IMG/VR virus record: IMGVR_UViG_3300023174_000038
Location: 248,001-312,000 of that record
Strand: one strand, 5' to 3'
DNA: 64,000 bases
A program made the position numbers and the translations under genes. The notes beneath the pieces are model-generated. The model made no database searches, was not told the origin of the DNA, and saw only the letters and a list, made by a program, of their open reading frames with translations. Positions within the stretch are counted from its first letter, which is position 1. Each line of letters starts with the position of its first letter. This document shows, piece after piece, positions 13,485 to 47,029 of this stretch.

Positions 13485-14810
13485 ATGAGATTTACCGAGA
13501 TTATAACTGAAAGCACTGATCTTATACCCTTTGCAGATGGGCATTTGGTTGCCAGTAACCATTTTATAAAAGATAGAAGTATCAAAAGAAATATATCTAT
13601 GGATAATATTTTACAGGTATTACATAAATTGGAAAAAACAAGAAAAGAAGAATTATTTAAAATGCCTTTTGTTAATTTTGTTGTAAAGGCCCCTCATCTT
13701 GGTATAGGTTTATCTAAACAAAAAGATTGGCATGGTGACATAGTATATGTAATTACTACCGCTCACGAAACTTTAAGAGTAGGTGATCTAGAAGATGTAT
13801 TTTATTTAGAAGAAGAAACTGGCACCAGACTCAAGGACCTAGCAAAAATTGCTACAAATATGCCGGATGCTGATTTTTGGTTAATACGTAAAGGTAGTGA
13901 TAAAACTGTTGGAAAACCTGTTAAAGAATTTGATCCTTCACGTATTGGTATTAAAGTTGTAAGAACTGATGTGCTTGACCCAAACTATCTTTATTATGTA
14001 ATGATGCATTTACACAATCAAGGACAATTTGCACGTATAGCAAATGGTACTACTAATTTAGTTAATATTACTGTAAATGATATTGCTAATATTCCATTAG
14101 GTCAACAAGGTATGACCGAAGCAGGTAGTCCGGCACAACAGGCTGCTATTGCTATTAATATGAAAAAACATCATAAAAAACCTAAATCAGAAAGCTTAAA
14201 TGAATTTGTATCTGATGATGGTGATGAAGAAGAATCACTACGCAAATATGCTAAGTTGTGGTATAACGGTGATGATACTACACAACAACAAGTTGAAAAA
14301 ATCTTAGCACGTATGGGTTGGGAAATTGGTGAGATAGAATCAGAAGAAGGCGGTGCATTTGTTGTACAGTCCGGTGATATGAATGGTGATAGTTACATTG
14401 GTTTCACTGTTAATGATTTAACTGAGAGTACGGAAAGGTATACAAAAATGAAAATAGAAGAACTAATTACTGAAGGCGAGAATTGGTCAAAGCACAATAA
14501 TCCAAGAGCAGGTGGTATGAGTAAAAAGTCTGTAAAGAGTTACCGCCGCAGTCATCCTGGTAGTAAGATTCAAACAGCAGTAACAACTAAACCAAGCAAA
14601 CTTAAAAAGGGTAGTAAGGCAGCAAAGCGCCGTGCTAGCTTCTGCGCTAGAATGCGTGGGATGAAGAAACATCGTACAGGTGCTAAAACAGCAAATGATC
14701 CAAACAGTAATATCAATAAAAGTTTACGTAGATGGCATTGTGAAAGCATTGAACAAATGCAAGAGTTAGTAATGTTAGCTGAACAAAAAATTAGGGATCT
14801 TAAGAAATGA
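13485..14810 (+). CDS. Mosaic putative virion-internal polyprotein (HsdS/TRD-like domain plus basic modules)
   Basis: N-term MRFTEIITE; linkers YLEEE, QGMTEA, SLNEF, LTES, LITEG; HsdS-like LDPNYLYY...GTT..NIT...IANIP; C-terminal KRRASFCARM module. Confidence 0.7.
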   Translation: MRFTEIITESTDLIPFADGHLVASNHFIKDRSIKRNISMDNILQVLHKLEKTRKEELFKMPFVNFVVKAPHLGIGLSKQKDWHGDIVYVITTAHETLRVGDLEDVFYLEEETGTRLKDLAKIATNMPDADFWLIRKGSDKTVGKPVKEFDPSRIGIKVVRTDVLDPNYLYYVMMHLHNQGQFARIANGTTNLVNITVNDIANIPLGQQGMTEAGSPAQQAAIAINMKKHHKKPKSESLNEFVSDDGDEEESLRKYAKLWYNGDDTTQQQVEKILARMGWEIGEIESEEGGAFVVQSGDMNGDSYIGFTVNDLTESTERYTKMKIEELITEGENWSKHNNPRAGGMSKKSVKSYRRSHPGSKIQTAVTTKPSKLKKGSKAAKRRASFCARMRGMKKHRTGAKTANDPNSNINKSLRRWHCESIEQMQELVMLAEQKIRDLKK

Positions 14811-16180
14811 ATTTTGTAGAACTATTTGAGGGTACAACACCCAAATTACCGGGTGCTGTAGGTGGCATCAAAGTTATGAGTATGGATCAATTCCTTGCTC
14901 AATCGGGTGATGAACCGGAAGAAAAAATAGATGAAATGTCTTCCGAAGAATTAGATAAAATGTCCCCTGAACAATTAGCACAGTTTACACATAAGGCTAG
15001 AACTGATAAAGCTAAGGTAGATCCCAAAACAATTGATCAGGCTTATGGTAAAAGTATGGATATAATGTTTCCGGATCGTAAAAAATCAGAACATAATAAA
15101 CAACAAGGTGTGGCGGAAGCAACCAAACTTCCAGCACAAACACGTGAACTAAAGGGTCAAGAACTAGATGATTACTTAGATAGAATTCGTAATCGTGAAA
15201 AGGGTAAAACAGACAAATATAAACTACCTTACATCCATCGGTCAAGTGTAGTAAAATACTACAATGAAGAAGGTAAACGCTACGATACAGACCAAATCAA
15301 AACAGCATTAGGCGTTCGTCCAAAGAAACTTCTTAAACAAAATGAGAAGATGAAACATAGTAATGGTGAACTAGAACAATTCTATAACATTGGTTTTGCC
15401 GCATTAGTTGGTATCGCACTAGACGAAGGAACTAACGAACTAATTGTAGTTAATACATGTCCGGGTGCTGGATCATGTAAAGTAGATTGTTTTGCTATGA
15501 AGGGAGGCAAAGTACAATTTGAAGGTCCTTGGTTAAGCGACGGAAGAATTCTTACATTCTTATTGAATGATCCAGATGGTTTCTTTAATCAATTAAGTGC
15601 AGAAATCACAAAAGAAGAAAAACAAGCACAAAAAGGTGGTTACAATTTAACTATTCGTTGGCATGATGCTGGTGATTTCTTTAGCCCAGAATATATGGAT
15701 CTAGCATTTAAGTTGGCGGCTGCCCATCCTGATGTTAAATTCTACGCTTATACAAAGATAGCCGATGCGGCATTAGGCCAAAAGCCAAGTAACTTTATTG
15801 TTAACTGGAGTGAAGGTGCAAGCACTAGCCAAGAGAAACAAGTTAAAGCACAGGATGCTAATTTAGATAAAACTAAAAATAGTCGTATTGTTCCAAGTAA
15901 GTTATTCTATGACTTGTTAAAGAAAGATAAGGATGGTAAGTTAGATAAAACTGCCGACGGTGCATGGCAACCACGTGATGCAGCCGCATTGGAAGAATTG
16001 AAAGATAGATTAGCGGCCGCATATAATCTAAAACGTGATAGTATCATTGATTACAATGAGATGATGGCCACCCCACAAAAGAATAACATTAAGAAATGGA
16101 ATGTTATTATTGCTCCGGGTGAGGGCGATATCAGTGCTAATAGACAAGATGTATTATCAACATTATTATTGAAACACTAA
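14807..16180 (+). CDS. Putative virion-internal protein with GP88-like (radical-SAM-related) domain
   Basis: N-term MNFVELFE; QGVAEA linker; CPGAGSCKVDCFA, IRWHDAGDF, FYAYTK. Confidence 0.7.
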   Translation: MNFVELFEGTTPKLPGAVGGIKVMSMDQFLAQSGDEPEEKIDEMSSEELDKMSPEQLAQFTHKARTDKAKVDPKTIDQAYGKSMDIMFPDRKKSEHNKQQGVAEATKLPAQTRELKGQELDDYLDRIRNREKGKTDKYKLPYIHRSSVVKYYNEEGKRYDTDQIKTALGVRPKKLLKQNEKMKHSNGELEQFYNIGFAALVGIALDEGTNELIVVNTCPGAGSCKVDCFAMKGGKVQFEGPWLSDGRILTFLLNDPDGFFNQLSAEITKEEKQAQKGGYNLTIRWHDAGDFFSPEYMDLAFKLAAAHPDVKFYAYTKIADAALGQKPSNFIVNWSEGASTSQEKQVKAQDANLDKTKNSRIVPSKLFYDLLKKDKDGKLDKTADGAWQPRDAAALEELKDRLAAAYNLKRDSIIDYNEMMATPQKNNIKKWNVIIAPGEGDISANRQDVLSTLLLKH

Positions 16181-16201
16181 CTGGTGTGATTAAATATAGT
16201 A

Positions 16202-19275: not shown

Positions 19276-19279
19276 ATAT

Positions 19280-20346: not shown

Positions 20347-20350
20347 ATTT

Positions 20351-22909: not shown

Positions 22910-22924
22910 ATTGATTCTCCTTAC

Positions 22925-33805: not shown

Positions 33806-34036
33806 TTATTGGATACCTGAGGTTGATGCGACTACACGTGTACCTATACTTAATGGACCTCTTGCAGTTGCCGTTGCAGTATCAGTAGCAAAGGTAATAC
33901 GTTGTACAGTAGATGTTTGACCGGGTGCGCTGGCCCCTCCTGCAAACCATCCTGCAGTATTACCTGAAGGCGGAGGTGCAACTGAAAATGTGATACCACC
34001 ACTAAATGTTATTCCAGCTGTAAACGTTCCTGTCAT
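33806..34036 (-). CDS. Single-repeat derivative of neighbouring repeat protein
   Basis: Similar N-leader, one AGWFAGG..RITFATDTATA.RGPLS unit and same SGIQ end as 34063..35001. Confidence 0.65.
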   Translation of the reverse strand: MTGTFTAGITFSGGITFSVAPPPSGNTAGWFAGGASAPGQTSTVQRITFATDTATATARGPLSIGTRVVASTSGIQ

Positions 34037-34062: not shown

Positions 34063-35001
34063 TTATTGTATTCCTGATGAACCGGCTGAGCTATACAATG
34101 CTGCACTTAAAGGACCACGTACACTTGCTGTTGCTGTATCTGTTGCATATGTAATTCTATCCACTAATGACGTTGCAGAAAATCCTCCTGCAAACCAACC
34201 ATAACTGTTATTACCAACTGAGGTAAAATATCCTCTACTAGAGCTAAGTGGGCCACGAATACTAGCGGTAGCAGTATCTGATGCATATGTAATACGTGAA
34301 ACGGTTGATATAACACTACTTCCACCTGCCCACCACCCATATGTGGTATTATCAGAAGATGCTGCCTGTGCATATGTACTTAGACCAAGTGGACCACGTA
34401 CACTTGCCGTTGCTGTATCTGTTGCATATGTAATACGATTGACTGTTGACACACCGCCTGGTATACCTCCGCCACCAAACCAACCATCAGTACTAATTCC
34501 GGCCGCCGCAAACCTAGAATTAGCCAAACTAAGTGGACCACGCACACTTGCTGTTGTTGTATCTGTTGCATATGTTACACGATCTACTAATGACGTTGGT
34601 GCACCCAAAGTGACCCCGCCACCAAACCAACCATCAGTAGTATTTCCGGCCGCAGCTAAATAAAATTTGGCTGCACTTAATGGGCCCCGAACACTTGCTG
34701 TTGCTGTATCAGTTGCATATGTTATTCTATTTACGGCTGATGAAGGTCCATTAACGTTGCCACCGACCCAACCATTAGTAGTATTGCCGGCACCTGCTGC
34801 GCTGCCTGTACCTGTACTTAATGGTCCGCGAATACTTGTTGTAGTAGTATCTGTGGTAAATGTAATACGATTGACAGTACTACGTACAGCAGGATTTCCT
34901 CCACTGACCCATCCTGCTGTTGCTTCAGATGGAGGTGCTGCCGTAAGCGTCCATCCTCCGCCCGATATTGTTACACCGCCACCACTAAATGTTACTGACA
35001 T
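34063..35001 (-). CDS. Repeat (beta-propeller-like) virion/surface protein
   Basis: Six ~46 aa repeats GW.GG...V.RITYATDTATASVRGPLS. Confidence 0.75.
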   Translation of the reverse strand: MSVTFSGGGVTISGGGWTLTAAPPSEATAGWVSGGNPAVRSTVNRITFTTDTTTTSIRGPLSTGTGSAAGAGNTTNGWVGGNVNGPSSAVNRITYATDTATASVRGPLSAAKFYLAAAGNTTDGWFGGGVTLGAPTSLVDRVTYATDTTTASVRGPLSLANSRFAAAGISTDGWFGGGGIPGGVSTVNRITYATDTATASVRGPLGLSTYAQAASSDNTTYGWWAGGSSVISTVSRITYASDTATASIRGPLSSSRGYFTSVGNNSYGWFAGGFSATSLVDRITYATDTATASVRGPLSAALYSSAGSSGIQ

Positions 35002-36039: not shown

Positions 36040-36972
36040 TTAAGAACCGTAGGCTGCGGCTCCAAGTTCGCCTCTAGCAGTGCCCACCCCGGTAGTATCT
36101 GTAGCAACCACGCCTGTATTTGATACTAGATTAGTCATTGATACTCTTACTCCAACCTCACCGTATCCAAAGATAGCTTTATCAGTTCCATAACCTGCGG
36201 CTGCAAGATTCATTCTAGCAGTACCGACTCCGGTAGTATCAGTTGCGACAACACCGGTGTTTGATACTAGATTGGTAATTGAATAATAACCACCATCAAA
36301 TCCATAACCAAATATAGCTTTACCTGTACCGTAACCAGCGGCCGCCAAACTATTTCTAACAGTACCGACACCCGTGGTATCTGTTGCTACTACTCCTGTG
36401 TTTGACACTAGGTTGGTTACTGCTGTTCTAGCACTTCCATATCCATATCCAAAAATAGCTTGTCCACTACTGCCGTAGCCGGCAGCTGCCAATGCCTGTC
36501 TAGCTGTACCAACCCCTGTTGTATCTGTGGCTACTACGCCTGTGTTTGAAACTAAATTAGTCATTGAGAACACAATAGTATTATTTGTTCCATATCCAAA
36601 TAAGGCTTTATCAGTGCCATACCCTGCGGCCGCCAAACTAGTTCTAGCAGTGCCCACTCCAGTTGTGTCATTGGCAACCACGCCTGTATTACTTACTAAA
36701 TTGGTTATTGCCGTATTACCGGTAGAATACCCGTATCCAAAAATAGCTTTATCTGTACCGTAACCTGCGGCTGCAAGTTGATATCTAGCAGTGCCCACAC
36801 CAGTTGTATCTGTAGCAACTACACCCGCACTTGTTACTAGGTTGGTTATTGCTGTTACACCTACCCCACCAATGTATCCATATCCAAATATAGCTTTATT
36901 ACCGCCTGGAGGTGGTGTAATAGCCCATCCTCCGCCATTTAATGTTATTCCACCTGTAATTGTTATTGACAT
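36040..36972 (-). CDS. Repeat (beta-propeller-like) virion/surface protein
   Basis: Six ~47 aa repeats KAIFGYG...TNLVSNTGVVATDTTGVGTAR..LAAAGYG. Confidence 0.78.
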   Translation of the reverse strand: MSITITGGITLNGGGWAITPPPGGNKAIFGYGYIGGVGVTAITNLVTSAGVVATDTTGVGTARYQLAAAGYGTDKAIFGYGYSTGNTAITNLVSNTGVVANDTTGVGTARTSLAAAGYGTDKALFGYGTNNTIVFSMTNLVSNTGVVATDTTGVGTARQALAAAGYGSSGQAIFGYGYGSARTAVTNLVSNTGVVATDTTGVGTVRNSLAAAGYGTGKAIFGYGFDGGYYSITNLVSNTGVVATDTTGVGTARMNLAAAGYGTDKAIFGYGEVGVRVSMTNLVSNTGVVATDTTGVGTARGELGAAAYGS

Positions 36973-36982: not shown

Positions 36983-37936
36983 TTATTGAAAAATTTCTGG
37001 ATGTGCTTTGCCAAATATCTTAATATACTTGCCAGCCATTACATCCGCTTCAGCTTCTATTGGACTACCAGGATAACTATCACCCGGCTTAATCATATTT
37101 AATTCACCCTGACGTACATGTGTTAATTCATGGAACACAGTACGTAATATATCTACTAAATTTCTATTAGCACAATAAACCCATACTTCACCCGTCTCTG
37201 GATTATGTCTTCCAGTATGATGACCTTCTTGTGCTTCATCACTATCATAACTAAACTCTATCTTTGGAGTATTTTGTAAATTCAACTTCTTACTTGTCCA
37301 AGCAAGAAACTTCTGTACAATAGGATTACTATTCAAATCTTCTTGTTCAGCTTCTGTAATGTAGGGCTTTAATAACTCTGGATCATATCCTTTATGTCTA
37401 GCAGAATCTCGTAATCGTCTTAACCCTTTAGCTTCAATTTGTCTTATTCTATCTCTAGACAAGTCAAACCTATCACCAATCTGTTGTAATGTCATGTCAT
37501 ACCAAAATCTTAAAATTAATACTTTTCGTTGGTCATCGGTTAATCTGTCTAAGCCGTTTTGGATAATTTGTTTAATACTATCATCTGTTGCAGGCTCCTC
37601 ACCAGCTGGATCTTTATATGGTACTCGTTCTGCCCTATTATAAATATCGTTTGGATCATTTAATGTTGGCATTTTATTATGAGCTCCACGATATGTAGCA
37701 CCATCTGGGTTGTAATGTCGTCCTCCAACCTCATCTAGTTTATCTTTAATCCAATTGTCTGGAGTTTTATGATATTTTCTAACAAATAAATCATGCAATG
37801 CATCACCAGTAATACGGTGTTTCTTTGCTATGTTTTTCATTAGCTTATCAATGGTATTATAGTCGTGTTTCTCTAAGCTAGGAAGTTTCTTAGCTAGTTC
37901 AACTGCGGCTGATTCGTATAGTTCTATTGCTCTCAT
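36983..37936 (-). CDS. Mosaic putative virion-internal protein: sigma70 region 4 plus HExxH zincin
   Basis: Start MRAIELYE after TAAATA; LT..QR.VL.LRF...TLQQIG..FDLSRDRIRQIEAKGLRRLR; YITEA linker; FHELTH...EAEA. Confidence 0.78.
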   Translation of the reverse strand: MRAIELYESAAVELAKKLPSLEKHDYNTIDKLMKNIAKKHRITGDALHDLFVRKYHKTPDNWIKDKLDEVGGRHYNPDGATYRGAHNKMPTLNDPNDIYNRAERVPYKDPAGEEPATDDSIKQIIQNGLDRLTDDQRKVLILRFWYDMTLQQIGDRFDLSRDRIRQIEAKGLRRLRDSARHKGYDPELLKPYITEAEQEDLNSNPIVQKFLAWTSKKLNLQNTPKIEFSYDSDEAQEGHHTGRHNPETGEVWVYCANRNLVDILRTVFHELTHVRQGELNMIKPGDSYPGSPIEAEADVMAGKYIKIFGKAHPEIFQ

Positions 37937-37947
37937 ATTAGTATTTA

Positions 37948-38038: not shown

Positions 38039-38039
38039 C

Positions 38040-38852
38040 TTAATCATTCGTCTTACATTTAGCACGTTTAGCATTGGTTAATGCTCCGTAATCTACTGGC
38101 CATTCTTTACCAGGCTGTAACTCTTTAGCGTTTGCAGGGAAATGGTACTTTACACCTGCATATTCTTGTATCTGTGCTAATGGAGCACGAAACTGTGTCA
38201 AATCATTACCCAAATTAACATATGGTTTCTTATGTGGGAACTGCCATCCAGCAACTTCATGTGTAACATTGTTAATAACAATCTTGTAGTAACCATGAGG
38301 AACAACTACACCATTACCAATCTTTTCATTACCTGTACCATAATATGCACCTACATAAATTGTGAATGGTTGTTTTAGTTGTACTGCCCATCCACGTATA
38401 CTTGTTTCTAATAGTTTCCATATGCCACGATTCAATGAACCATGTTGAGGATACATATTAGTCATTAAAAAACTTTCATATTCTACTTGTTGTGTCCAAG
38501 ATAGATCACCATCTGGTGCAGCATGACCTTTGTCATAACCCGTAGCTACATAATCATCAGGCTTTGCACCATCTTTAATACTAGCATCAGCAACAAAAGC
38601 GTTTGTTCTTGGGAAACAACCTAAAGCATTTTCTGGCTTAAGAGTGTATGCTACATATACTGGTATCTTTGCTGGCGAATCATATGCTACAAGATATGCT
38701 TCACGACATATTGGTTGTGATGGTCTTGCTGTTTGTGCAAATCCGTACGGACTATGTATTTGACATTGTTGTACTGGTAAGGGAGCACGTTGATCCCATG
38801 CAAATATATTTGTTGATATTAGTACTGTTGCTATTGCTATTATTTTTTTCAT
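38040..38852 (-). CDS. Secreted DNA/RNA non-specific endonuclease (NucA/EndA family)
   Basis: Signal peptide; YDKGHAAP, TNMYPQ...LNRGIW..LE, VPHGYYK. Confidence 0.9.
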   Translation of the reverse strand: MKKIIAIATVLISTNIFAWDQRAPLPVQQCQIHSPYGFAQTARPSQPICREAYLVAYDSPAKIPVYVAYTLKPENALGCFPRTNAFVADASIKDGAKPDDYVATGYDKGHAAPDGDLSWTQQVEYESFLMTNMYPQHGSLNRGIWKLLETSIRGWAVQLKQPFTIYVGAYYGTGNEKIGNGVVVPHGYYKIVINNVTHEVAGWQFPHKKPYVNLGNDLTQFRAPLAQIQEYAGVKYHFPANAKELQPGKEWPVDYGALTNAKRAKCKTND

Positions 38853-38862
38853 TCAATCCTCT

Positions 38863-39489
38863 TTATCCTACTACTGTACGATTCTTTACTTTACTAATTT
38901 CTACACTGAGTGGTGTATTAGTTGTTTTTGCTCTAAATATCTTATCAGTCTCACGTACACCTGGCTTAAGTTCAGATGCTACAATTAAGAATCTTGCTCT
39001 ATTCTTTCTCATGCCAATAAACTCACCTACTAATACTTGGTAATTAGGATAGTTAGGTGTTAAATCTATTTTAGGATTTTCTTGTTCATTGATGCTTTCT
39101 GACACACCTTGTGCAATTGCTTCACGTGCCTGACGTTCATTTTCTTGTTTGAATCGTTGCATGGCTTGACTATCATTTATTTGTCCACGATCCAGTGCTT
39201 GCCAAATTGGCAAATCAAATGTGAGATATTTTTTTTGTACTGCTTGAGCATAACTAACTTCATTGCCACGACCTTGCCAATCAGGTTTATGCCCCCAAAC
39301 AACAGATACAGATTGACCATTTGGGAAGTTGATACGCATACGCTCTCCATAAAATACATATGTACTACCTTGCCATGTAAAAGCAAGATCGCCATTAACT
39401 GTTTTACCCATAGACCAGCCATGCTTTTTTAACAGTGAATCAACTGCGGCTTGATTATCATTCTCAATAATAAACTCTGTTGCTCTCAT
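38863..39489 (-). CDS. Mosaic putative virion-internal protein
   Basis: N-term MRATEFIIE; internal QGVSESINE linker. Confidence 0.68.
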   Translation of the reverse strand: MRATEFIIENDNQAAVDSLLKKHGWSMGKTVNGDLAFTWQGSTYVFYGERMRINFPNGQSVSVVWGHKPDWQGRGNEVSYAQAVQKKYLTFDLPIWQALDRGQINDSQAMQRFKQENERQAREAIAQGVSESINEQENPKIDLTPNYPNYQVLVGEFIGMRKNRARFLIVASELKPGVRETDKIFRAKTTNTPLSVEISKVKNRTVVG

Positions 39490-39929
39490 TACTCACGTTC
39501 TCTTTTTAATGTTGAACGGATAAACCATGCTTTCTTACCGTATAGGTCTTGCAGTTCAGCCATGTAGTTAGCAATACCCTGTTGACGTTCATTTGTTGCT
39601 TCATCAAACATAGCAACAACAAGTTGACCTAATGTTTCACAATCTTGTAGTAACTCAATAAACATGAGTTCAGCTCTTGGAACTTTAGTTTGGTCTTGAA
39701 TGATACTTAATTCAGCATAACGTGTTAGACTGCCAGGAGTATAGTGACCTAATATTCTGATATATTCAGCTACAGGATCAATAGTAGCATTTACATCTTC
39801 ATACAATGTATTAAAGAATTCGTGATATTGTGGGAAGTTACTTCCCTCCACATTCCAATGAAAGTTTTGTGATTTGATAGCAAAGCTTTGTGTACTAGCT
39901 AATAGTACTTTTAAATTATCTGATAACAT
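39489..39929 (-). CDS. dps: Dps/ferritin-like protein
   Basis: FHWNVEGSNF..YHEFF...D.VAE.IR. Confidence 0.9.
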   Translation of the reverse strand: MLSDNLKVLLASTQSFAIKSQNFHWNVEGSNFPQYHEFFNTLYEDVNATIDPVAEYIRILGHYTPGSLTRYAELSIIQDQTKVPRAELMFIELLQDCETLGQLVVAMFDEATNERQQGIANYMAELQDLYGKKAWFIRSTLKRERE

Positions 39930-39938
39930 GATTACTCG

Positions 39939-42900
39939 TTAGTCTTTCTTTTTTGTATTAACATTGATGGCTTTACCACTACGGTCAGGATTAGGATCTT
40001 CTCTACGTTTACGTTGAGCGGCACTTGCACGACCCTTCTTACCTAGACTATGTGCTTTACTTTGTGGCAAGCATTTTGGTTTACCTTCTCCTGGTTCTCT
40101 AGCACATGGACCTTTAATCTTTCCTTTAGTATCCATGCGAACCCACTTTTCTTTATTAAACCAATCATGCAAACTTTCATCTGCCCTTTCAATACCTTCT
40201 AGTATAGAACTTTCATTCTTCTTCCCACCGTTACCCCAGTTACTTGCGCCTTTGTTGCGACACTTAACTAATGCACCACTGGCATAAGCACTTGGCCATA
40301 CTTTATAACGACTCTTTACTTTGTAGTAGCAAGCATCTTTCTTTTCGTTCATTAATTCTTCACTAACCATTTCGCCACCACAGTGTGGGCAACTTTCACT
40401 GTGTTGGTCTTCATTTGTTTTATTTTTAGCACAACTACCCGGAAAGCCTGCTTTAGTACCAGCAACTCTATGATAGCCGGACCAGCATTTCAATTCATCT
40501 AGTTGATCTTTTGAATGGTCACCGTGTGTTTCACACATACCGCAGTCTTCACAGACCATTTCCATTTCAATGCTTTCATTGTGCTTCTTCTTACCTGCAC
40601 AATGAGCCTTTTGACTAAAGCCTTTAGGATGACTACAGTTAATACTGCTCTTATATTTTTGACTCCAGCCTTCATCCATCTCTTGTTCATTAACGTAAAT
40701 TGCGGCAGTTGTTTTATTTAAACTTTGTGGATCTTTTACGCCGGCTGCTACTTTAATTGCTTTAACTTTTTGTCTATAGTCATCAGCATATTCGGCTAAT
40801 CTGTAGCCTAACATTTTACCAATTTCTTCAGGTGTAGCTGGTTTATCTTGCGGAGTATTTGCACCAAAAGTTGTGTCTAGTATCTTAGGCCATGCCATCC
40901 AGACCATATTTGATAACTCTTTATATGCTTTGCTTCTTAATTCTTTAATTTGAGCTTCAGCCTCATCTTCAGAAATACTAGGTGCGGGTGCAGGAATAGT
41001 TCCTTTGAATGCTTGAGCATTACCGGCACCGCCTAATCCTGCGGCAGCTAATGCGCCGGCGCCTGCTGCCTTACCCATGTTACCTAAAAACCCTCTACGG
41101 TTCATATCAGCTTCTTTCAAACCTGATTTTTTACGTATATACAATCTATCCTGTAATATTGAAATAGCATTGTCTAACTTTTTATTCAATGATTGATAGT
41201 TATCTTTTGCACCATACTTAACGTGCATACTAGTATCAGTATCATTCTGCATTGCAGGAGTTAACAAACCTTTACGTTCTAATCTATCAACTAACTTATC
41301 TAATAGTTCTTGCTTTTGTATAGCATTATCTAATTGTGCTAATCTAGCTTTTAATACAGAATGTTTTTCACCAGGTTGTGCAACTGGTGTTGGTTGAAAT
41401 TCTCTACGTAAACCTTGTTGTGCTTTTTGTACTGTGTTCTTTTCAAAATCTTGTCTCCAAGCTTCTATTTCAGCTTCACGCTGTTTCTCTATAGCTAATT
41501 TAGCTTGAATCAACGCATCCAATGATGTAGATTTTAATTGATCACCTAAGTTTTCATCAATTGATGCATAACGCTTATCATCTAAATCATCGTGGTAACT
41601 TCTTTGTGGTGGTTTTTTTAGCTCTATTGGTTTCTTAGATGAACCTCTATAACCACGTTCCCATGCCGCTGCACCTGCTGCCGCACTTTTACCATTTTTA
41701 ACAAAGTGATTAATGACTTCTTGTTTACTGTTAAATCTAGGTGATTCTATACCTTCATTTGTTGCCATTTCGCCATCATTACTATGACCATAATATTTGG
41801 CTACTTTTTGTAAATCAGCAGAATTTCTATCGTTAAGATAATCAGTTACTAAATCATGTATCTGATATCTTTGTTCTTGCGGGGCTGGTAATTCTATTTC
41901 ACCTTCACTTGCATCAGCAATATGTGCGGCGCCGGGACTGTCTAAGAACCATATCTCATCATCCTCATCCCATTCTAATCCCCATTTGTCTATTGTTGCA
42001 GTTAATACATAGTTGTTAGTAGTACCTACTACAAATTTGTTACCGCCTATATAACGTGAGCTATTTGGTTGACCGTAATCTTTTGGTCCTTTAGGGCCGC
42101 CAGTTTGTACAAATTCATTTATACCTTGACTGATACCAGATTTCTTTGTATCATTAGCAAATTGTTTTTTAGTTGCACGAACAATACCACTGAAACGTTT
42201 ATCACCACGCTTGTAATCGCCCTCTTTATCAGCTTTTCCTGCATCGGCAGCGGCCGCTGTTTTATATTGTGCTAGTTTCTCATTAGAGATTTCATCTAGT
42301 TGTGATTCAGGCATTAATCCGTGCTTTGTAATACGAGCATCTAATTCATCACGCTCTTTGGAATATTTTTGTATAAGTTCTTTATTACCTACTTGAATTG
42401 CTTGTCTAAGTTTTTCCTGAATGGCATCTGCTAAATCATAGTATTGATCCATTTTCATTCTAGTGGTATTATCTTCTTTTATTGTTTTACCTTGACCTAA
42501 TTGTTGTAAATCACTTGTTAATACATCTTGTGTAACACTACCCATACCTTTTGAAATCGTAATGCGAGAATGTTTACGATCCTTACTCATAGCAACTACT
42601 TTTGATGGTTGTCCAAAATACTTAACAGTATCACCTATCTGTATGTTCTTCATAGATACATTACCAACATTAACCGGTTTATCACCTGCAAAGTTACCTT
42701 GATCTCCCCATGGGTCATCTAAACTTTCATTTGTACCAGTAGCTAATCTATCATGGTCACTATCACGTTGGGCTTTTTCTGCCGCTGCCTTCATAGCACG
42801 ACCTTTAGCAAAATCTTTTTCTTGTCTTATTAAACCATATGGATCATACTCATCATCATCTGTTTGTGTATGTCTACCACGTTTAGGATATGATGGTGCA

Positions 42901-42983
42901 TCTGCCCCGTATTCTCTTGCTGGATCATTATGTCCGTAAAAAGGATTGGATTCGTTTATTATACCTTTTAGAATATTGCTCAT
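39939..42983 (-). CDS. Large mosaic putative virion-internal polyprotein
   Basis: Many short unrelated modules separated by xxE linkers (IINES, TNES, IKED, LDEI, INEF, TNEG, IDEN, LKEA, MDEG, LDEL, MNEK, ILEG). Confidence 0.75.
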   Translation of the reverse strand: MSNILKGIINESNPFYGHNDPAREYGADAPSYPKRGRHTQTDDDEYDPYGLIRQEKDFAKGRAMKAAAEKAQRDSDHDRLATGTNESLDDPWGDQGNFAGDKPVNVGNVSMKNIQIGDTVKYFGQPSKVVAMSKDRKHSRITISKGMGSVTQDVLTSDLQQLGQGKTIKEDNTTRMKMDQYYDLADAIQEKLRQAIQVGNKELIQKYSKERDELDARITKHGLMPESQLDEISNEKLAQYKTAAAADAGKADKEGDYKRGDKRFSGIVRATKKQFANDTKKSGISQGINEFVQTGGPKGPKDYGQPNSSRYIGGNKFVVGTTNNYVLTATIDKWGLEWDEDDEIWFLDSPGAAHIADASEGEIELPAPQEQRYQIHDLVTDYLNDRNSADLQKVAKYYGHSNDGEMATNEGIESPRFNSKQEVINHFVKNGKSAAAGAAAWERGYRGSSKKPIELKKPPQRSYHDDLDDKRYASIDENLGDQLKSTSLDALIQAKLAIEKQREAEIEAWRQDFEKNTVQKAQQGLRREFQPTPVAQPGEKHSVLKARLAQLDNAIQKQELLDKLVDRLERKGLLTPAMQNDTDTSMHVKYGAKDNYQSLNKKLDNAISILQDRLYIRKKSGLKEADMNRRGFLGNMGKAAGAGALAAAGLGGAGNAQAFKGTIPAPAPSISEDEAEAQIKELRSKAYKELSNMVWMAWPKILDTTFGANTPQDKPATPEEIGKMLGYRLAEYADDYRQKVKAIKVAAGVKDPQSLNKTTAAIYVNEQEMDEGWSQKYKSSINCSHPKGFSQKAHCAGKKKHNESIEMEMVCEDCGMCETHGDHSKDQLDELKCWSGYHRVAGTKAGFPGSCAKNKTNEDQHSESCPHCGGEMVSEELMNEKKDACYYKVKSRYKVWPSAYASGALVKCRNKGASNWGNGGKKNESSILEGIERADESLHDWFNKEKWVRMDTKGKIKGPCAREPGEGKPKCLPQSKAHSLGKKGRASAAQRKRREDPNPDRSGKAINVNTKKKD

Positions 42984-42984
42984 A

Positions 42985-43866
42985 TCACGCTTTCTTATTC
43001 TTGTTATCTAACATGCCACGCTTATTAGCTGTTGCCCAAGCAATGTTCTCCGCTTCTTTTTTACTGTGACCTAATTTCTTTTCACTTTGTGCTACATGCT
43101 TAACCATACGGTCTACTTTAGCACCTTCATCTATTGGTGCATGAACTGGACATTGGTCTTGACCATGTGTTCTACACACACATTTCAAATTAGGTTTGCC
43201 TTCTGCTACGCCCTGTTGACCATACGTATCAAGAATTTGTCTAACATAAAAATTATAAAAACCACGACGGCTATTGTATTCTCTATCTCCAAGTACAGTC
43301 TTTAGTGCTTTTACAGCATCAGTTACTTCTGGGCCACGCATTATTTTTAATGAGTCAGTAACTAGTGTATCACCTCTTTGTGAGCCTTCTGATACACCTT
43401 GAACTTGTTTACCTTCTAAGTATTCACGTATAGTGTTTAGATAATCATTGGCTTTAATAATCTTTTCTTGTACCCAACCATCAAGACCTTCTTCTTCACT
43501 AAGGTCTTTAATCATTGAATAAACTTGTTGAGCATTCTTTGCGGCACTGAATAGATCACTACGTGCCATCTCAACTTCGTGGTCTATACGACTTTGACCA
43601 TGTGGCACAAATCCATTTTTACGACTACGTCCTTGTCCCGGAACGACAATAACATCATCTTCTTGTAGTTCTGCTTCACTTATTTCAGCACTTTCATTAA
43701 TGCTGTTAGCATATGGAGCACTAGTCTTTTTACCCTTGAATAGTGTGCCTACTTTCTTGCCACCATATATGCTAGGATTTCCCCTAGATTGTGTGCCACC
43801 TAATGGTGAATTTACAGTAGCTATTGCACCTGCTGTTGTAGTTTCAGTGATTTGTTTGATTTTCAT
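42985..43866 (-). CDS. Mosaic putative virion-internal polyprotein
   Basis: MKIKQITE; SINES, QGVSEG, QGVAEG, IDEG linkers; DHEVEMARSDL...WVQEKI module. Confidence 0.72.
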   Translation of the reverse strand: MKIKQITETTTAGAIATVNSPLGGTQSRGNPSIYGGKKVGTLFKGKKTSAPYANSINESAEISEAELQEDDVIVVPGQGRSRKNGFVPHGQSRIDHEVEMARSDLFSAAKNAQQVYSMIKDLSEEEGLDGWVQEKIIKANDYLNTIREYLEGKQVQGVSEGSQRGDTLVTDSLKIMRGPEVTDAVKALKTVLGDREYNSRRGFYNFYVRQILDTYGQQGVAEGKPNLKCVCRTHGQDQCPVHAPIDEGAKVDRMVKHVAQSEKKLGHSKKEAENIAWATANKRGMLDNKNKKA

Positions 43867-43920
43867 AAGGATTTCCGTACTAATAGTGTATTTATCAAAA
43901 TACCATAATATGGAAACTTA

Positions 43921-44835
43921 TTAGATTTTGCCTGAGGGCTTTGCTGTTGGTGGGATACCTGCTCTACTAGTATTCCAATAGAATGCTTTTGCGTTCTTTT
44001 TGATACTGTCAGGCTTAACATCTACTGTTAATGCTGTACTAAAACGAGGGTCATTCTTCTGTTTTTTGCTTGGGATATAGCCCGAAGCTTCACCTACATA
44101 CATTTCATCTACATTAGCGTACATATTGTCTAAACTTAAATGTTTGCTATGTAATTTGTCTCTCAAGTCATATAGTTTTGTAATATAGCCCCTGCTACGT
44201 AATGCTTTATATGCTAAATTTTCAGGGCTAAACTCACCACCTTTATCTAATCCAGCTTGACGATATTGTTTAATCTTTTTTAATACTTTATTGACTTTAC
44301 TTATTTTATCAGATTGTAATACTGTATCAATAATGTCTAATAGTTTTATATATTTTGCTTTAGTAGCTGTTTGGTCAAAGTTAGCTCTACGTTTTGCAGG
44401 CATACGCAACCATTTATTATCTTTAACACTATACTCACCTAAGCTAGTGACAGGTTCTGCCGCATCTTGTATGTATAATTCTACCGGAATTCCATTGATA
44501 GTAATATCATGTGAATCATTGTATAAATCTTTTTTAGCCTTAAAGAATTCATGGTAAATGTCATCGTCAGGTAAATCCTTCATATTGACTAAGATATGTA
44601 AATCTAAATCACTATGGTCTGTATAACTATAGGCTGCATTACTTCCGGATATAGTAATATCACGTACATCCAAATCATGTATACCCATCTCTTGTAAGAA
44701 ATCTTGTGCTATGTGTTTTAGTTGTAGTTCAACTTCAGGTTGAAGATGTTGTCCACGGAATAACTTTGGATTGAGGTTATCGTGAAATGTCACAGCATCT
44801 GACATTTTGAATGAATGTAATTCTTTTAAGTCCAT
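43921..44835 (-). CDS. Pol-beta-superfamily nucleotidyltransferase with appended C-terminal module
   Basis: SGSNAAY...SDLDLH...VELY; VGEA linker then SGYIPSKKQKNDPRF module. Confidence 0.78.
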   Translation of the reverse strand: MDLKELHSFKMSDAVTFHDNLNPKLFRGQHLQPEVELQLKHIAQDFLQEMGIHDLDVRDITISGSNAAYSYTDHSDLDLHILVNMKDLPDDDIYHEFFKAKKDLYNDSHDITINGIPVELYIQDAAEPVTSLGEYSVKDNKWLRMPAKRRANFDQTATKAKYIKLLDIIDTVLQSDKISKVNKVLKKIKQYRQAGLDKGGEFSPENLAYKALRSRGYITKLYDLRDKLHSKHLSLDNMYANVDEMYVGEASGYIPSKKQKNDPRFSTALTVDVKPDSIKKNAKAFYWNTSRAGIPPTAKPSGKI

Positions 44836-44857
44836 AGAGTATTTATCTAAAAACTAT

Positions 44858-44879
44858 AAAGCCCCTTTCGGGGCTTTAT
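44858..44879 (-). terminator. Intrinsic terminator
   Basis: AAAGCCC-(CGAAA)-GGGCTTT hairpin at end of 44879..45850. Confidence 0.65.
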
Positions 44880-45850
44880 TATGCGGCAGTAATTTTCTTT
44901 ATTTCGTTACCATCTTTATCGATGAACTTCATTCCGAACTTTTCTTGCTGTTCTTGTAGGAACATAGGACCAACTGTTTTCATTAGATGTTCCTGATTTT
45001 CCATACAGAATACATAAGATCCTGAGTGACGTAATAGAATACGTTTGTCAACCCAAATCTTACCACCTAAATCACGCCAGTTCTCACAGAATGTCCAATC
45101 TTCACTATAATAACGATTCTGACGGACCGCTGTATCAAAGTAGGTTTTTAAGTGTTGGTCAAACTTAGGATCTAATCCAATGTCGTTTTTATATTGCTTA
45201 ACAGCAGGATGCGATTTGAGTTTTTCAAACACATGTTTCTTCATCAATAAGAAACCTGTACCTGCTTTAGATACTTCTTGGAATCCATCTGGTCCTTCTT
45301 CTGCACCTTCAAATCCATTAACAACCCATTTAATTGGCATTGTTTTCATTGGATATAATCCTGCACAAACATCTACGTTACGGTTCAATAGAACTAATAG
45401 ATGCCATGGTTCCCAACCAATGTCAGCATCAACAAAGAATAAATGTGTTGCGTCTGGCATATCTAGGAACTTAGCAGTCAATGTATTTCGTGCTCGGCTA
45501 ATAAGTGATTCATTAACCATTGTTTCTAATGTCCAATCAATACCAAGTTGACGAGCTGTATTAGCCCACTTGATAAATGACATGAATGTTGATTCTGTTA
45601 ACATACCACCATAGCAGGGCATAGCGATATGTACTTTAGTAGTTTTTAAAAAGTCTACATTAACTTGAACTTGTCCGGGACTCGGTGCTTGTTCTTTTGC
45701 AGCCTGTTCAGCGATTTCCTGTATTTTTTCTACGGGAACTGTTTTTTCTGACATGTCTACTTTAGGTGCTTTAGTAGCTTTAGTAGTTGTTTTTGTTGCG
45801 GCTTTTGCAGGTTTGTCTGCTGCCTTGTCGATTGTTTTCTTTGTTGCCAT
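44879..45850 (-). CDS. GT-A glycosyltransferase-like protein
   Basis: AMPCYGG, ESLISRARN, FFVDADI, GTGFLL, SEDWTFC; Lys/Ala-rich N-tail. Confidence 0.8.
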   Translation of the reverse strand: MATKKTIDKAADKPAKAATKTTTKATKAPKVDMSEKTVPVEKIQEIAEQAAKEQAPSPGQVQVNVDFLKTTKVHIAMPCYGGMLTESTFMSFIKWANTARQLGIDWTLETMVNESLISRARNTLTAKFLDMPDATHLFFVDADIGWEPWHLLVLLNRNVDVCAGLYPMKTMPIKWVVNGFEGAEEGPDGFQEVSKAGTGFLLMKKHVFEKLKSHPAVKQYKNDIGLDPKFDQHLKTYFDTAVRQNRYYSEDWTFCENWRDLGGKIWVDKRILLRHSGSYVFCMENQEHLMKTVGPMFLQEQQEKFGMKFIDKDGNEIKKITAA

Positions 45851-45901
45851 TTGATCCTCTTGTTAAGATACTATTATTTACATCAAAACAAGGGGGTCAA
45901 A

Positions 45902-47029
45902 TTATTTTTCCTCTAGATAATCCACACTTTCGGTAACCTTAACTGGATCTTCTTCTGCGTTTCTAAACTCAAAACGACTTTGTTGTAGATTGTACTTTTT
46001 AATAGCTAATTCTAAATATCTATCAATTAAATTGTACGGTACTTTACGATTAACTAACAGAGGTGTTCTTCTTGGACCATCTAAGTAATATACATCTACA
46101 TATTGTGGATGAAATACTTTAGCTGTTTTTTCTGCTTCTGCCAAACCTTGCTTTACTGTTTTATAAGCACTCTGTAGCACAAACATATATTCTTTATCTG
46201 TTATATCCGGTAGTATACCTTCAACTGCTGTATTGAAAAAGTCATCACCTGCTATCATATTCATAGCATGTATCATACCCAATTCATCAACATTTTTTTG
46301 TTTTGCTACTTGTATAGCAATTTCCAATAGTTTTCTTATTCTACGATTTCTATCATTCTCGCCACCACCATCACCCCTGTCGCTACTCGGCGGGACAAAT
46401 TCATTTAATGATCCTTCTGACAATTCATTACCCATACCCATATCTAACATCTTAACAACATTAGCGGCTAGTTTAGGATTCTTTTGTGTTGCAGGATATA
46501 AACTCATAACCATTGCTGTCTTACGCTTATCATTCAATGTAGGCCATGCATTACGTATCTCTGTGGCACTAGTGATACCAGGACCAAATTCTACTGTGGG
46601 TAAATAAGCCATGTAAGCATGTTTGCCAAATGGTTGTACATTTTCGCCTGTGTATGGTTGAAAGTATGCCGGACTACCGTCTTTCTTTGTACCACCTGGT
46701 TTAGGACTTTCATTACGATCCTTTTCACTACGAACAAAGATTACCACGTCTTGTTCTGGATTAAACTTATCAGTGATTTCTCTAGGTTGAAATGGACTTT
46801 TAACTTGTATAAAATGTCCAGGACTAACTCCTGCTACCTTAGCTAGTTTTTCTTTAATAGCAAAGGGGAAAGGTCTGGTCTTTGTATCATTGGTAGCGGC
46901 TACATATACATCAGCACCGGGAAATGCTTTAAGTGCGGCTTGGTACAACGATGCATGACCAGCATGAAAAGGATGAAAGCCTCCTGGCATTATAACAACT
47001 GTACTCATATCAGTATGATAATTTAACAA
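45902..47029 (-). CDS. HxGH nucleotidyltransferase with appended modules
   Basis: PGGFHPFHAGH, SATEIR; then LSEGSLNEF, QGLAEA, VTES linkers; start likely MSTVV. Confidence 0.78.
   Translation of the reverse strand: MLNYHTDMSTVVIMPGGFHPFHAGHASLYQAALKAFPGADVYVAATNDTKTRPFPFAIKEKLAKVAGVSPGHFIQVKSPFQPREITDKFNPEQDVVIFVRSEKDRNESPKPGGTKKDGSPAYFQPYTGENVQPFGKHAYMAYLPTVEFGPGITSATEIRNAWPTLNDKRKTAMVMSLYPATQKNPKLAANVVKMLDMGMGNELSEGSLNEFVPPSSDRGDGGGENDRNRRIRKLLEIAIQVAKQKNVDELGMIHAMNMIAGDDFFNTAVEGILPDITDKEYMFVLQSAYKTVKQGLAEAEKTAKVFHPQYVDVYYLDGPRRTPLLVNRKVPYNLIDRYLELAIKKYNLQQSRFEFRNAEEDPVKVTESVDYLEEK

What the first reader, a model, noticed from the sequence alone, without database searches (positions are those of the whole stretch)
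13485..47029. Family of modular 'cargo polyproteins' with capsid-targeting-like N-termini and protease-site linkers
Seen: six ORFs start with related peptides: MRFTEIITE (13485), MNFVELFE (14807), MRAIELYE (37936), MRATEFIIE (39489), MSNILKGIINE (42983), MKIKQITE (43866). These six and two more (44835, 47029) are strings of unrelated short domains whose borders coincide with hydrophobic-x-Glu motifs. A recurrent QG(V/M/L/I)xE linker occurs at 14106, 15104, 39095, 42112, 43199, 43385 and 46134, and (S/G)(L/I)NEFV occurs in three different proteins. Known: T4 internal proteins use a capsid-targeting peptide (MKTYQEFIAE) and the gp21 prohead protease cuts after (L/I)xE. Inference: this is a plug-and-play system in which effector modules are concatenated into polyproteins, packaged in the head, released by the maturation protease and injected with the DNA. 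The linker would be both cleavage site and module-shuffling junction. I do not know of a description of such a system at this scale.
Basis: partly seen in the sequence, partly recalled or inferred. Interest (0 to 1): 0.9.

Follow-up and report, generated by a model that had tools for sequence, protein, structure and literature searches.

The report
Modular cleavable polyproteins of jumbo phage
An uncultivated jumbo phage carries late genes that join unrelated small protein modules through short glutamate-ending connectors, behind T4-like head-targeting leaders; this looks like a mix-and-match kit of cleavable cargo proteins, and the commonest connector is conserved down to its DNA letters.

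Summary
The window is part of IMG/VR contig 3300023174_000038 (348.7 kb), a T4-superfamily jumbo phage. Five ORFs start with a T4 Ip-like leader (5 found, 0.006 expected), and a sixth has its own conserved leader. More than 120 related contigs hold orthologs of 205-1445 aa that differ by whole modules. Insertion breakpoints lie at hydrophobic-x-Glu: both ends in 50% of 103 cases, against 4% at random. One block can be a stand-alone leader protein in one phage and internal in another. New here: QGVAE(G) is nearly always encoded by CAAGGTGTGGCGGAA(GG), using rare codons, always in frame and never elsewhere, so it is a DNA-level recombination joint. Also new: Tat signals (before GH19 and TonB_C domains) always sit 2-4 residues after an x-x-Glu, even 200-900 residues inside a protein, which argues for cleavage. 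Head packaging by a gp21-type protease and injection remain inferred. Support comes from leader likeness, Peptidase_S77 in connector-bearing relatives, and late-promoter-like motifs. A conserved leader-bearing mini-zincin in the cluster is the rival processing enzyme. Verdict: a new variant of known kinds (T-even Ip/CTS proteins, polyvalent proteins).

The parts
13485..14810 (+). ORF A, 441 aa. Leader MRFTEIITE (13485-13511). Connectors: QGMTE (14106-14120), SLNEF (14190-14207), LITE before the last module. C-terminal DUF6321 module (14505-14735).
   Evidence: late-promoter-like GATAAATA at 13422-13429
14807..16180 (+). ORF B, 457 aa. Leader MNFVELFE (14807-14830). Near-canonical connector CAAGGTGTGGCGGAAGCA (15104-15121). 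GP88 domain (15329-15838).
   Evidence: relatives with the same leader type carry the canonical connector
36983..37936 (-). ORF C, 317 aa from the ATG. Leader MRAIELYE (37913-37936). Inserted Sigma70_r4 module (37409-37552), bounded by LDE| and ITE|. C-terminal HExxH mini-zincin module (36986-37354).
   Evidence: CATAAATA 13 nt upstream of the ATG
38863..39489 (-). ORF D, 208 aa. Leader MRATEFIIE (39463-39489). Connector QGVSE (39097-39111). Ends exactly where orthologs continue with VLE|Tat signal+GH19.
39939..42983 (-). ORF E, 1014 aa. Leader MSNILKGIINE (42951-42983). Connectors include QGINEF (42111-42128) and GLKE (41112-41126). Internal Tat-like signal (41010-41105). C-terminal Cys-rich/basic modules, including a DUF5872-like one (40116-40325), shared with the cyanophage T4-GC119 protein.
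42985..43866 (-). ORF F, 293 aa. Leader MKIKQITE (43843-43866), followed by a TTTAGAIATV segment that resembles the MCP/gp24 maturation site. Connectors QGVSEG (43384-43401) and QGVAEG (43198-43215).
   Evidence: GATAAATA 30 nt upstream
43921..44835 (-). ORF G, 304 aa. Nucleotidyltransferase-like N-terminal domain (phrog_36119) plus a C-terminal tail. Orthologs of 449-727 aa carry 100-350 aa insertions between ..NV(N/D)E| and V(A/E/G)E|ASG. No Ip-type leader.
   Evidence: GATAAATA 12 nt upstream, after a terminator-like hairpin
45902..47008 (-). ORF H, 368 aa. N-terminal cytidylyltransferase-like domain (46733-46993) with no leader, then connectors SLNEF (46397-46414) and QGLAE (46136-46150) and further modules. 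An ortholog carries IDE|Tat signal+TonB_C after the same enzyme domain.

Best explanation
These genes encode modular polyproteins. Each is a string of small, independently folding modules, mostly of unknown function. The recognisable ones in the window and its relatives are a sigma-70 region 4 domain, nucleotidyltransferases, a mini-zincin, a GNAT, a GH19 muramidase and a TonB C-terminal domain. Every module is preceded by a short hydrophobic-x-Glu site. At the N-terminus this site is the end of a T4 Ip-like capsid-targeting leader; inside the protein it is a connector, most often QGVAE(G). Shown: the modules are gained, lost and swapped exactly at these sites, both within and between protein families. 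Shown: the commonest connector is one 15-18 nt DNA sequence, so it acts as a micro-homology joint that keeps exchanges in frame. New joints are canonical and older ones drift by one or two substitutions while keeping the x-x-Glu. Inferred: the sites are cut after Glu and the modules are released. Inferred, and less certain: the leader takes the precursors into the prohead core, the gp21-family protease (Peptidase_S77) cuts them there, and the pieces are ejected with the DNA. Modules with a Tat signal would then be re-exported to the periplasm of the new host.
For: Leaders:
- 5 window ORFs match the strict leader pattern, 0.006 expected.
- T4 ipII/ipIII read MKTYQEFIAE|A. In T4 the targeting determinants are residues 4 and 7 and the processing determinants residues 8 and 10; gp21 cuts after L/I-x-E.
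- Head-core proteins of the same superclade start the same way: MCP MSELLE|.., KYLSE|SATAG; scaffold MLDALKTLFE|; core MILRE|.

Module junctions:
- Orthologs range from 205 to 1445 aa, with whole-module indels at Q(Q)G(V/L/M)xE|G.
- Of 103 distinct clean insertions, 50% have [LIVM]xE within 4 residues of both breakpoints (random 4%) and 87% at one or more (random 33%).
- A 318-aa leader protein matches residues 429-648 of a 1233-aa polyprotein at 86% identity.

Connector DNA:
- 63 QGVAE sites in unrelated contexts across about 35 contigs are about 80% encoded by CAAGGTGTGGCGGAA. Background use is about 10% for GTG and about 7% for GCG.
- The 15-mer occurs 92 times in 1.37 Mb, 91 of them in frame 0 of long ORFs, and 0 times in 1.62 Mb of head-module loci.
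- All 103 further 17-mer hits in IMG/VR are in frame.
- Bacterial genomes give only scattered single hits, mostly in high-GC taxa.
- Variant connectors are 1-2 substitutions from the canonical sequence.

Cleavage:
- All 15 clear Tat-type signals lie 2-4 residues after x-x-Glu, after leaders or up to about 900 residues inside a protein. Most have no Met there, so internal initiation does not explain them.
- Pfam confirms TAT_signal+Glyco_hydro_19, and CTP_transf_like+TAT_signal+TonB_2.
- AF2 confidence falls below 50 exactly at both connectors of ORF F.

Head link:
- L255, L271 and L291 carry portal, a Peptidase_S77-like protease, scaffold and gp23 MCP, and a connector polyprotein just downstream of the MCP gene.
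- (G/C)ATAAATA motifs lie 12-63 nt upstream of A, C, F and G.
Against: - No virion or cleavage data exist for any member.
- The head module of this contig was not retrieved, so the protease is shown only for relatives.
- G and H carry connectors but have no leader.
- Packaging a Tat-exported GH19 muramidase or a TonB_C domain in the head and re-exporting it after injection has no precedent. It would fit cytoplasmic processing in the producing cell just as well.
- A conserved leader-bearing HExxH zincin is encoded in 36 of the related loci and could be the processing enzyme.
- [LIVM]xE is a weak motif: 232 occurrences in the window proteome.
- The nucleotide conservation shows recombination or descent and says nothing about proteolysis.
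- The AF2 model of F is of low overall confidence (mean pLDDT 58).
Confidence: 0.55

Rival explanations
1. The polyproteins are cleaved in the cytoplasm of the producing cell, not in the head. The enzyme would be the cluster-encoded mini-zincin (the HExxH module of ORF C, a separate protein of about 190 aa in most relatives) or another soluble protease. The released modules act late in the same infection. Examples are a Tat-exported GH19 endolysin whose signal stays masked until cleavage, and TonB_C decoys in the periplasm. On this view the leader is a recognition handle for that protease or a chaperone.
For: - The zincin is among the most conserved genes of the cluster: 36 loci, invariant HELxH..SYPGSPIE, and 1820 database clusters.
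- Its AF2 model (pLDDT 82) best matches minimal zincins: SPRTN, Wss1, abylysin, selecase.
- Polyvalent proteins are thought to be processed by embedded metallopeptidases.
- Tat-dependent export needs cytoplasmic release.
- H-family proteins have connectors but no leader.
- ClpA-like and DnaJ genes lie just upstream.
Against: - The sites match gp21 specificity (hydrophobic-x-Glu with a small P1' residue).
- The leaders match T4 Ip leaders and the superclade's own head-core N-termini.
- The zincin carries a leader itself, like a substrate or cargo.
- Foldseek E-values are weak (0.1-1), and no Pfam peptidase family reaches its threshold.
- A connector polyprotein gene sits next to the MCP gene in three contigs.
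Confidence: 0.25
2. There is no proteolysis. These are ordinary multi-domain proteins, the Glu-ending segments are flexible linkers, and the shared N-termini reflect common descent or recombination at conserved 5' ends (promoter, ribosome-binding site and first codons).
For: - Connector DNA conservation and 5'-end conservation need only recombination.
- [LIVM]xE is frequent by chance.
- There is no experimental evidence of cleavage.
Against: - Tat signals up to about 900 residues inside a protein, always just after x-x-Glu, are hard to explain without cleavage. So is a cytoplasmic nucleotidyltransferase fused upstream of a Tat-exported TonB_C domain.
- The last residues of the leader are interchangeable with connectors in front of the same module.
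- Glu at the junction is kept while the neighbouring positions drift.
Confidence: 0.1
3. The connector is first of all a DNA or RNA element, for example a recombination hotspot (Chi-like), the target of a homing-type nuclease, or an SD-like AGGUG ribosome pause. The peptide it encodes would be incidental.
For: - Rare codons GTG, GCG and GGC are fixed in a 35% GC genome.
- Homing endonuclease genes are common in these phages.
- Published T4-type precedents exist: PeSL cassettes and gp38 glycine-rich motifs.
Against: - The motif is never found out of frame, antisense or intergenic (91 of 92 and 103 of 103 in frame).
- Many junctions use other sequences that share only hydrophobic-x-Glu.
- Common codons are used for Gln, the first Gly and Glu, so there is no general rare-codon pause.
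- This reading is compatible with the best explanation rather than exclusive of it.
Confidence: 0.1

Closest known systems
T-even internal proteins (IpI, IpII, IpIII and relatives) with the capsid targeting sequence
   Same: A short N-terminal leader ends in (L/I)-x-Glu: T4 ipII/ipIII MKTYQEFIAE, here MRATEFIIE and MRFTEIITE. The cargo behind a shared leader is diverse and fast-evolving. The phages belong to the T4 superfamily with a gp21-family protease. Ip proteins are injected and act against host defences.
   Different: T-even Ips are small single proteins of 8-20 kDa. Here up to about ten modules are chained (up to 1014 aa in the window, 1562 aa in relatives) with internal sites. Packaging and cleavage are not demonstrated here. 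Some members lack a leader.
Polyvalent proteins of phages and conjugative elements (Iyer, Burroughs, Anand, de Souza, Aravind 2017; PMC5512222)
   Same: Many unrelated effector domains sit in one polypeptide encoded by portal-terminase phages. They are proposed to be packaged, injected and processed into units, and were likened to viral polyproteins.
   Different: In that model, processing is assigned to embedded MPTase-type peptidase domains. No conserved inter-domain connector, N-terminal leader or nucleotide-level joint was described there. None of the hallmark polyvalent domains was detected by Pfam here.
Processed head, inner-body and ejection proteins of phiKZ, 201phi2-1 and SPN3US
   Same: Dozens of head proteins in jumbo phages are cut after Glu by a diverged gp21 homolog, some at several sites, and many are ejected.
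   Different: The motif there is S/A-x-Glu; here the P3 residue is hydrophobic, as in T4. That is a different phage lineage; here the DNA polymerase, MCP and portal are T4-type. No module shuffling at the sites has been described for them.
PeSL cassettes and gp38 glycine-rich motifs of T4-type phages
   Same: Short conserved sequences flank variable segments, and genetic exchange happens within or near them.
   Different: PeSLs are intergenic promoter-terminator elements. The gp38 motifs are structural parts of one domain. Here the joint is an in-frame linker of 15-18 nt between independent modules and doubles as a likely protease site.
Cyanomyovirus 'T4-GC 119' protein (P-SSM2 PSSM2_123, S-SM2 SSM2_109, Syn9 gp114)
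   Same: It is built from the same small Cys-rich/basic modules (DUF6321, DUF5872-like and others), each preceded by x-x-Glu. Its length varies (271-708 aa) through inserted modules. It is encoded between gp15 and gp16/17 in the structural region.
   Different: It has no Ip-type leader and no QGVAE connector. Its function is unknown, and only one record calls it a 'virion protein'.

Membership tests
T4-type CTS-bearing internal head proteins | N-terminal leader of about 10 residues with hydrophobic targeting positions and an (L/I)-x-Glu processing site | tested here: met
   Met for A, B, C, D, E and F, compared with T4 ipII/ipIII read from NC_000866 and the rules in PMC9026906. G and H do not meet it.
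T4-type CTS-bearing internal head proteins | The phage encodes a gp21-family (Peptidase_S77) prohead protease | tested here: inconclusive
   Not in the window, and the rest of the contig was not retrieved. It is present in the superclade and in three contigs that carry the canonical connector.
T4-type CTS-bearing internal head proteins | The protein is incorporated in the prohead core, cleaved there and ejected with the DNA | not testable with these tools
   Needs virion proteomics or genetics; no cultured member was found.
T4-type CTS-bearing internal head proteins | Small single-module protein | tested here: not met
   208-1014 aa with 2 to about 10 modules.
Polyvalent proteins (Iyer et al. 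2017) | Two or more unrelated effector domains in one polypeptide of a phage or mobile element | tested here: met
   Sigma70_r4 plus zincin in C; CTP_transf_like plus other modules in H; GP88, DUF6321, GH19, TonB_C and GNAT in the window or relatives.
Polyvalent proteins (Iyer et al. 2017) | Embedded MPTase-type metallopeptidase for self-processing | tested here: inconclusive
   An HExxH mini-zincin is present in ORF C and as a separate protein in relatives. Its fold resembles SPRTN, Wss1 and selecase at weak E-values, and no Pfam peptidase family passes its threshold.
Polyvalent proteins (Iyer et al. 2017) | Hallmark domains such as ArdC-N, DarB-type helicase/methylase, ParB-like DNase or lysozyme | tested here: not met
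   None found by Pfam in the window ORFs or in seven long relatives. The GH19 in relatives is the nearest equivalent.
phiKZ-type processed ejection and inner-body proteins | Cleavage motif S/A-x-Glu in a phiKZ-like phage | tested here: not met
   P3 is V/I/L/M in 127 of 127 QG-type connectors by construction, and hydrophobic at most other junctions. The polymerase, MCP and portal are T4-type.
Tat (twin-arginine) signal peptides | (S/T)RRxFLK motif, hydrophobic stretch and AxA site | tested here: met
   Window ORF E residues 627-658 meet it by motif. Pfam TAT_signal hits relatives at E from 1e-6 to 5e-3. The window segment itself got no Pfam hit.
Tat (twin-arginine) signal peptides | Located at the N-terminus of the exported polypeptide | tested here: not met
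   The signal is internal in the primary translation product, up to about 900 residues in, and would become N-terminal only after cleavage at the preceding x-x-Glu.

The most novel reading that the evidence does not exclude
A widespread clade of uncultivated jumbo phages runs a combinatorial effector-assembly system. A universal in-frame DNA adaptor of 15-18 nt serves both as the recombination joint and as the protease site. This lets any module be spliced into any leader-tagged polyprotein, loaded into the capsid, cut free and injected. Some modules then use the new host's Tat pathway to reach the periplasm (a GH19 muramidase, TonB C-terminal decoys). This would be a phage counterpart of exon shuffling joined to polyprotein processing.
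Probability: 0.35. Interest if true: 0.9.

Novelty: new variant of a known kind. Interest (0 to 1): 0.78.

Why it matters
If the reading is right, the cargo a large phage injects is not a fixed gene set. It is a shuffled library held together by one short adaptor that keeps exchanges in frame and also marks where the protease cuts. That would explain how such phages renew counter-defence and takeover functions quickly. It would yield hundreds of uncharacterised small modules as candidate injected effectors. It would give a natural, portable design (leader + module + connector) for loading foreign proteins into T4-type capsids. Internal Tat signals would be a first hint that some phage-delivered or late-released proteins are routed on to the periplasm. 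The family is abundant: one core gene has 1820 database clusters, and more than 120 IMG/VR stretches carry the exact 17-mer. It has no cultured or annotated member.

Tried and rejected
- Near-identity DNA search and tblastn of ORF F against cultured phages found nothing. A and E match only through small modules in cyanophages and pelagiphages.
T4 head proteins find nothing in the window or the cargo loci.
- Pfam on ten excised window modules and on seven long relatives gave almost nothing. A profile of the zincin against PDB sequences gave nothing significant.
- The connector as a chance k-mer is rejected: 0 expected in the window, and bacterial hits are single and mostly in GC-rich genomes.
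- The connector as an out-of-frame, antisense or intergenic DNA element is rejected.
- Internal translation starts for the Tat modules are rejected as a general explanation, because most have no Met at the site.
- A rare-codon pause is unlikely, because Gln, the first Gly and Glu use the common codons.
- A literature search for the connector peptide found no phage paper. Repoila et al. 1994 could not be read.
- Virion status of the cyanophage T4-GC119 protein could not be settled from annotations.
- The AF2 model of ORF F was too weak for a fold search.

Full report
**What the window is.**
The 64-kb window is positions about 248,004-312,003 of IMG/VR contig IMGVR_UViG_3300023174_000038, which is 348,701 bp long. 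It has 35-37% GC and no tRNA genes. Its family-B DNA polymerase (29471-32188, minus strand) is 42-48% identical to those of Sinorhizobium phage Phosso, Agrobacterium phage Atu_ph07 and RaK2-like Klebsiella, Erwinia and Pectobacterium jumbo phages. No cultured phage matches at the DNA level. This is therefore an uncultivated jumbo phage of the T4 superfamily. The rest of the window holds replication and auxiliary genes:
- clamp loader, UvdE endonuclease, DnaJ and a ClpA-like ATPase;
- a NUMOD3 homing endonuclease;
- a secreted Endonuclease_NS and a Dps-like ferritin.

No head gene lies in the window.

**Checking the observation.**
- A strict, post-hoc leader pattern matches five of 91 window ORFs against 0.006 expected.
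- The sixth ORF (E, MSNILKGIINE) has a leader of its own that is conserved in 39 orthologs.
- G starts MDLKE, and H starts directly with an HxGH nucleotidyltransferase fold. These two have no Ip-type leader.
- Pfam and PHROGs recognise only a few modules: DUF6321 (A), GP88 (B), Sigma70_r4 (C), a weak DUF5872 (E) and a cytidylyltransferase-like domain (H).

**Modules are exchanged at the Glu sites.**
A scan of IMG/VR with ORF F returned 129 relatives, of which 80 loci were kept.
- F orthologs all share the N-terminus MKIxQIxxE-(T/S)TT(A/S)G, and most share the C-terminal module. Their lengths run from 205 to 897 aa.
- A MAFFT alignment shows whole blocks inserted or deleted exactly at Q(Q)G(V/L/M)xE|G.
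- The other families in the same loci behave alike. Lengths are E 265-1445 aa, the MRAxEFIxE family 74-499 aa, G-type 304-727 aa and H-type 323-654 aa.
- Among 103 distinct clean insertions of at least 25 aa, 50% have [LIVM]xE within four residues of both breakpoints (4% for random placements). 87% have it at one or more breakpoints (33% random).
- Modules also move between families. A 318-aa protein that begins MRAGEFITE| matches residues 429-648 of a 1233-aa E-type protein at 86% identity. E-type C-terminal blocks occur at the ends of F-type proteins. H-type proteins share modules with both.

**The connector is conserved as DNA (new finding).**
- Across 127 distinct QG[VLIM]xE sites the consensus is CAA GGT GTG GCG GAA GGC.
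- For QGVAE, 63 sites with unrelated flanks in about 35 contigs are about 80% encoded by the identical CAAGGTGTGGCGGAA. In the same loci GTG makes up about 10% of Val codons and GCG about 7% of Ala codons.
- The 15-mer with at most one mismatch occurs 92 times in 1.37 Mb. Of these, 91 are in frame 0 of ORFs of at least 100 codons; none is antisense or intergenic.
- It is absent from 1.62 Mb of head-module loci of the same superclade.
All 103 occurrences in the 80 loci returned are in frame, up to four per ORF, and many of those ORFs have Ip-type leaders.
- As a control, 596 Gb of bacterial genomes give only single scattered hits, mostly in taxa of 60-70% GC, for example within pheT. That is the pattern expected of chance hits.
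- Variant connectors in close relatives lie one or two substitutions from the canonical sequence, for example GTA ACG, TTG GCG and ATG GCA. In the window most are such variants and one is near-canonical (15104).
- The simplest reading is a micro-homology recombination joint with birth and decay: new junctions are canonical, and old ones drift but keep hydrophobic-x-Glu. This step is inference. T4-type precedents are the PeSL cassettes and exchanges at conserved gp38 motifs.

**Evidence that the sites are cut.**
- All 15 clear twin-arginine signals in the data set lie 2-4 residues after an x-x-Glu. The signal has the form (S/T)RRGFL(K/G)G, then a hydrophobic stretch, then AxA.
- Some follow a leader directly, as in MRATEFISE|DISRRGFLGG. 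Others follow internal connectors 85 to about 900 residues into the protein, including ORF E residues 627-658. Most have no Met at the site.
- Pfam confirms TAT_signal plus Glyco_hydro_19 behind leaders. The same unit follows two D-type modules in L013.
- In L049 a cytidylyltransferase-like domain is followed by IDE|, a TAT_signal and a TonB C-terminal domain.
- A cytoplasmic enzyme fused upstream of a Tat-exported periplasmic domain makes sense only as a precursor.
- Window ORF D ends exactly where its orthologs continue with VLE|Tat-GH19.
- The AF2 model of ORF F has low overall confidence (mean pLDDT 58). It does show helical modules at 93-157, 162-218 and 247-282, with pLDDT below 50 exactly at both connectors.

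**Which protease, and where.**
In favour of the prohead protease:
- T4 ipII/ipIII start MKTYQEFIAE|A and ipI ends its leader with ITE|A.
- gp21 cuts after L/I-x-Glu, and the ten-residue CTS is sufficient for packaging.
- In related jumbo phages the head module runs portal (Portal_T4), small protein, acidic protein, Peptidase_S77, scaffold, Gp23 MCP. Those proteins start the same way: MSELLE|, KYLSE|SATAGATSA in the MCP, MLDALKTLFE| in the scaffold and MILRE| in the small protein.
- The F family's ..ITE|TTTAGAIATV closely resembles the MCP and T4 gp24 maturation site.
- Three contigs with the canonical connector (L255, L271, L291) carry this head module. They also carry a connector polyprotein just after the MCP gene, separated from it only by a GIY-YIG endonuclease gene.
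- (G/C)ATAAATA, close to the T4 late promoter, lies 12-63 nt upstream of A, C, F and G.

Against it, or in favour of a rival:
- The head module of this contig was not retrieved.
- G and H lack leaders.
- The cluster encodes a highly conserved leader-bearing HExxH protein. It is the C-terminal module of ORF C and a separate protein of about 190 aa in most of the 36 loci that carry it, and it has 1820 database clusters.
- Its AF2 model (pLDDT 82) best matches minimal zincins, at weak E-values.
- Published polyvalent proteins are thought to be processed by such embedded peptidases.
- A Tat-exported muramidase would also fit release in the producing cell.

**Comparison and verdict.**
The system combines features of several known kinds:
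- T-even Ip/CTS proteins (leader, gp21-type site, diverse cargo);
- polyvalent proteins (many effector domains in one chain);
- phiKZ/SPN3US head processing (multiple cuts after Glu).

It differs from all three in chaining many modules behind one leader, in using a universal connector, and in conserving that connector as DNA. The same small modules build the cyanomyovirus T4-GC119 protein, encoded between gp15 and gp16/17, where each is again preceded by x-x-Glu. They also occur as tiny stand-alone ORFs in pelagiphages. No paper describing the connector was found.

My estimates for the separate claims are:
- shuffling at connectors: established;
- proteolytic release: likely, about 0.7;
- capsid loading by the leader, cutting by the gp21-type protease, and injection: plausible, about 0.45-0.5.

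Taken together, this is a new variant of known kinds.

Noticed in passing
window 42985-43866 (first ~25 codons, 43792-43866); L086:5563-6738; L203:10001-11176: After its leader, the F family continues with (S/T)TT(A/S)G(A/S)(I/V)AT(V), which is nearly the same as the segment after the predicted maturation site of the superclade's MCP (KYLSE|SATAGATSAGNIAT) and resembles T4 gp24 (LRE|STTT). This may be mimicry of the MCP N-arm.
   Followed up: partly
L001:1486-2301 (P-SSM2), L002:1632-3758 (S-SM2): The cyanomyovirus 'T4-GC 119' protein, encoded between gp15 and gp16/17, is a chain of the same small Cys-rich/basic modules (DUF6321, DUF5872-like and others), each preceded by x-x-Glu. S-SM2 has extra inserted modules, including a DUF192-like one. 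Its function and virion status are unknown.
   Followed up: partly
L049:1804-3066; L060:15137-15778; L013:14906-16153: Relatives encode a Tat signal plus a TonB/TolA C-terminal domain behind a nucleotidyltransferase, and a Tat signal plus a GH19 muramidase behind leaders or other modules. These would be periplasm-directed modules of a phage polyprotein.
   Followed up: partly
window 48296-50572 and 50597-51394: A ClpA/ClpB-like double-AAA+ protein (phrog_4871) and a full DnaJ (J domain plus C-terminal domain) are encoded 1.3 kb upstream of the cluster. They may be phage chaperones or an unfoldase linked to the polyproteins.
   Followed up: no
window 38040-38852 and 39489-39929: A Sec-signal Endonuclease_NS nuclease and a Dps-like ferritin, both without leader or connector, are interleaved with the polyprotein genes.
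   Followed up: no
window 33806-34036, 34063-35001, 36040-36972: Three paralogous ORFs start MS(V/I)T(F/I)(S/T)GG..GGGW (phrog_19111). One has a late-promoter-like motif upstream (35027). They may be fibre or surface proteins.
   Followed up: no
window 51437-52240; L115:2347-2910; L291:1956-2678: Free-standing homing endonuclease genes (NUMOD3 / GIY-YIG type) recur, in relatives directly after the MCP gene, as segD does in T4.
   Followed up: no
window 29471-32188 versus L088, L091-L093: In Eneladusvirus-like contigs the DNA polymerase gene lies about 2-3.5 kb downstream of the MCP gene. In this phage the polyprotein cluster starts about 5 kb upstream of the polymerase gene, roughly where the head module lies there, so the synteny differs.
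   Followed up: no
window 13422, 37949, 43896, 44847, 35027, 6491, 32527 and others: (G/T/C)ATAAATA occurs 18 times. Eleven of these lie 11-71 nt upstream of a gene start in the right orientation; a twelfth (37949) lies 13 nt upstream of ORF C's ATG. This is a probable late promoter, close to T4's TATAAATA.
   Followed up: partly
Whether they belong to the family was not examined.
   Followed up: no
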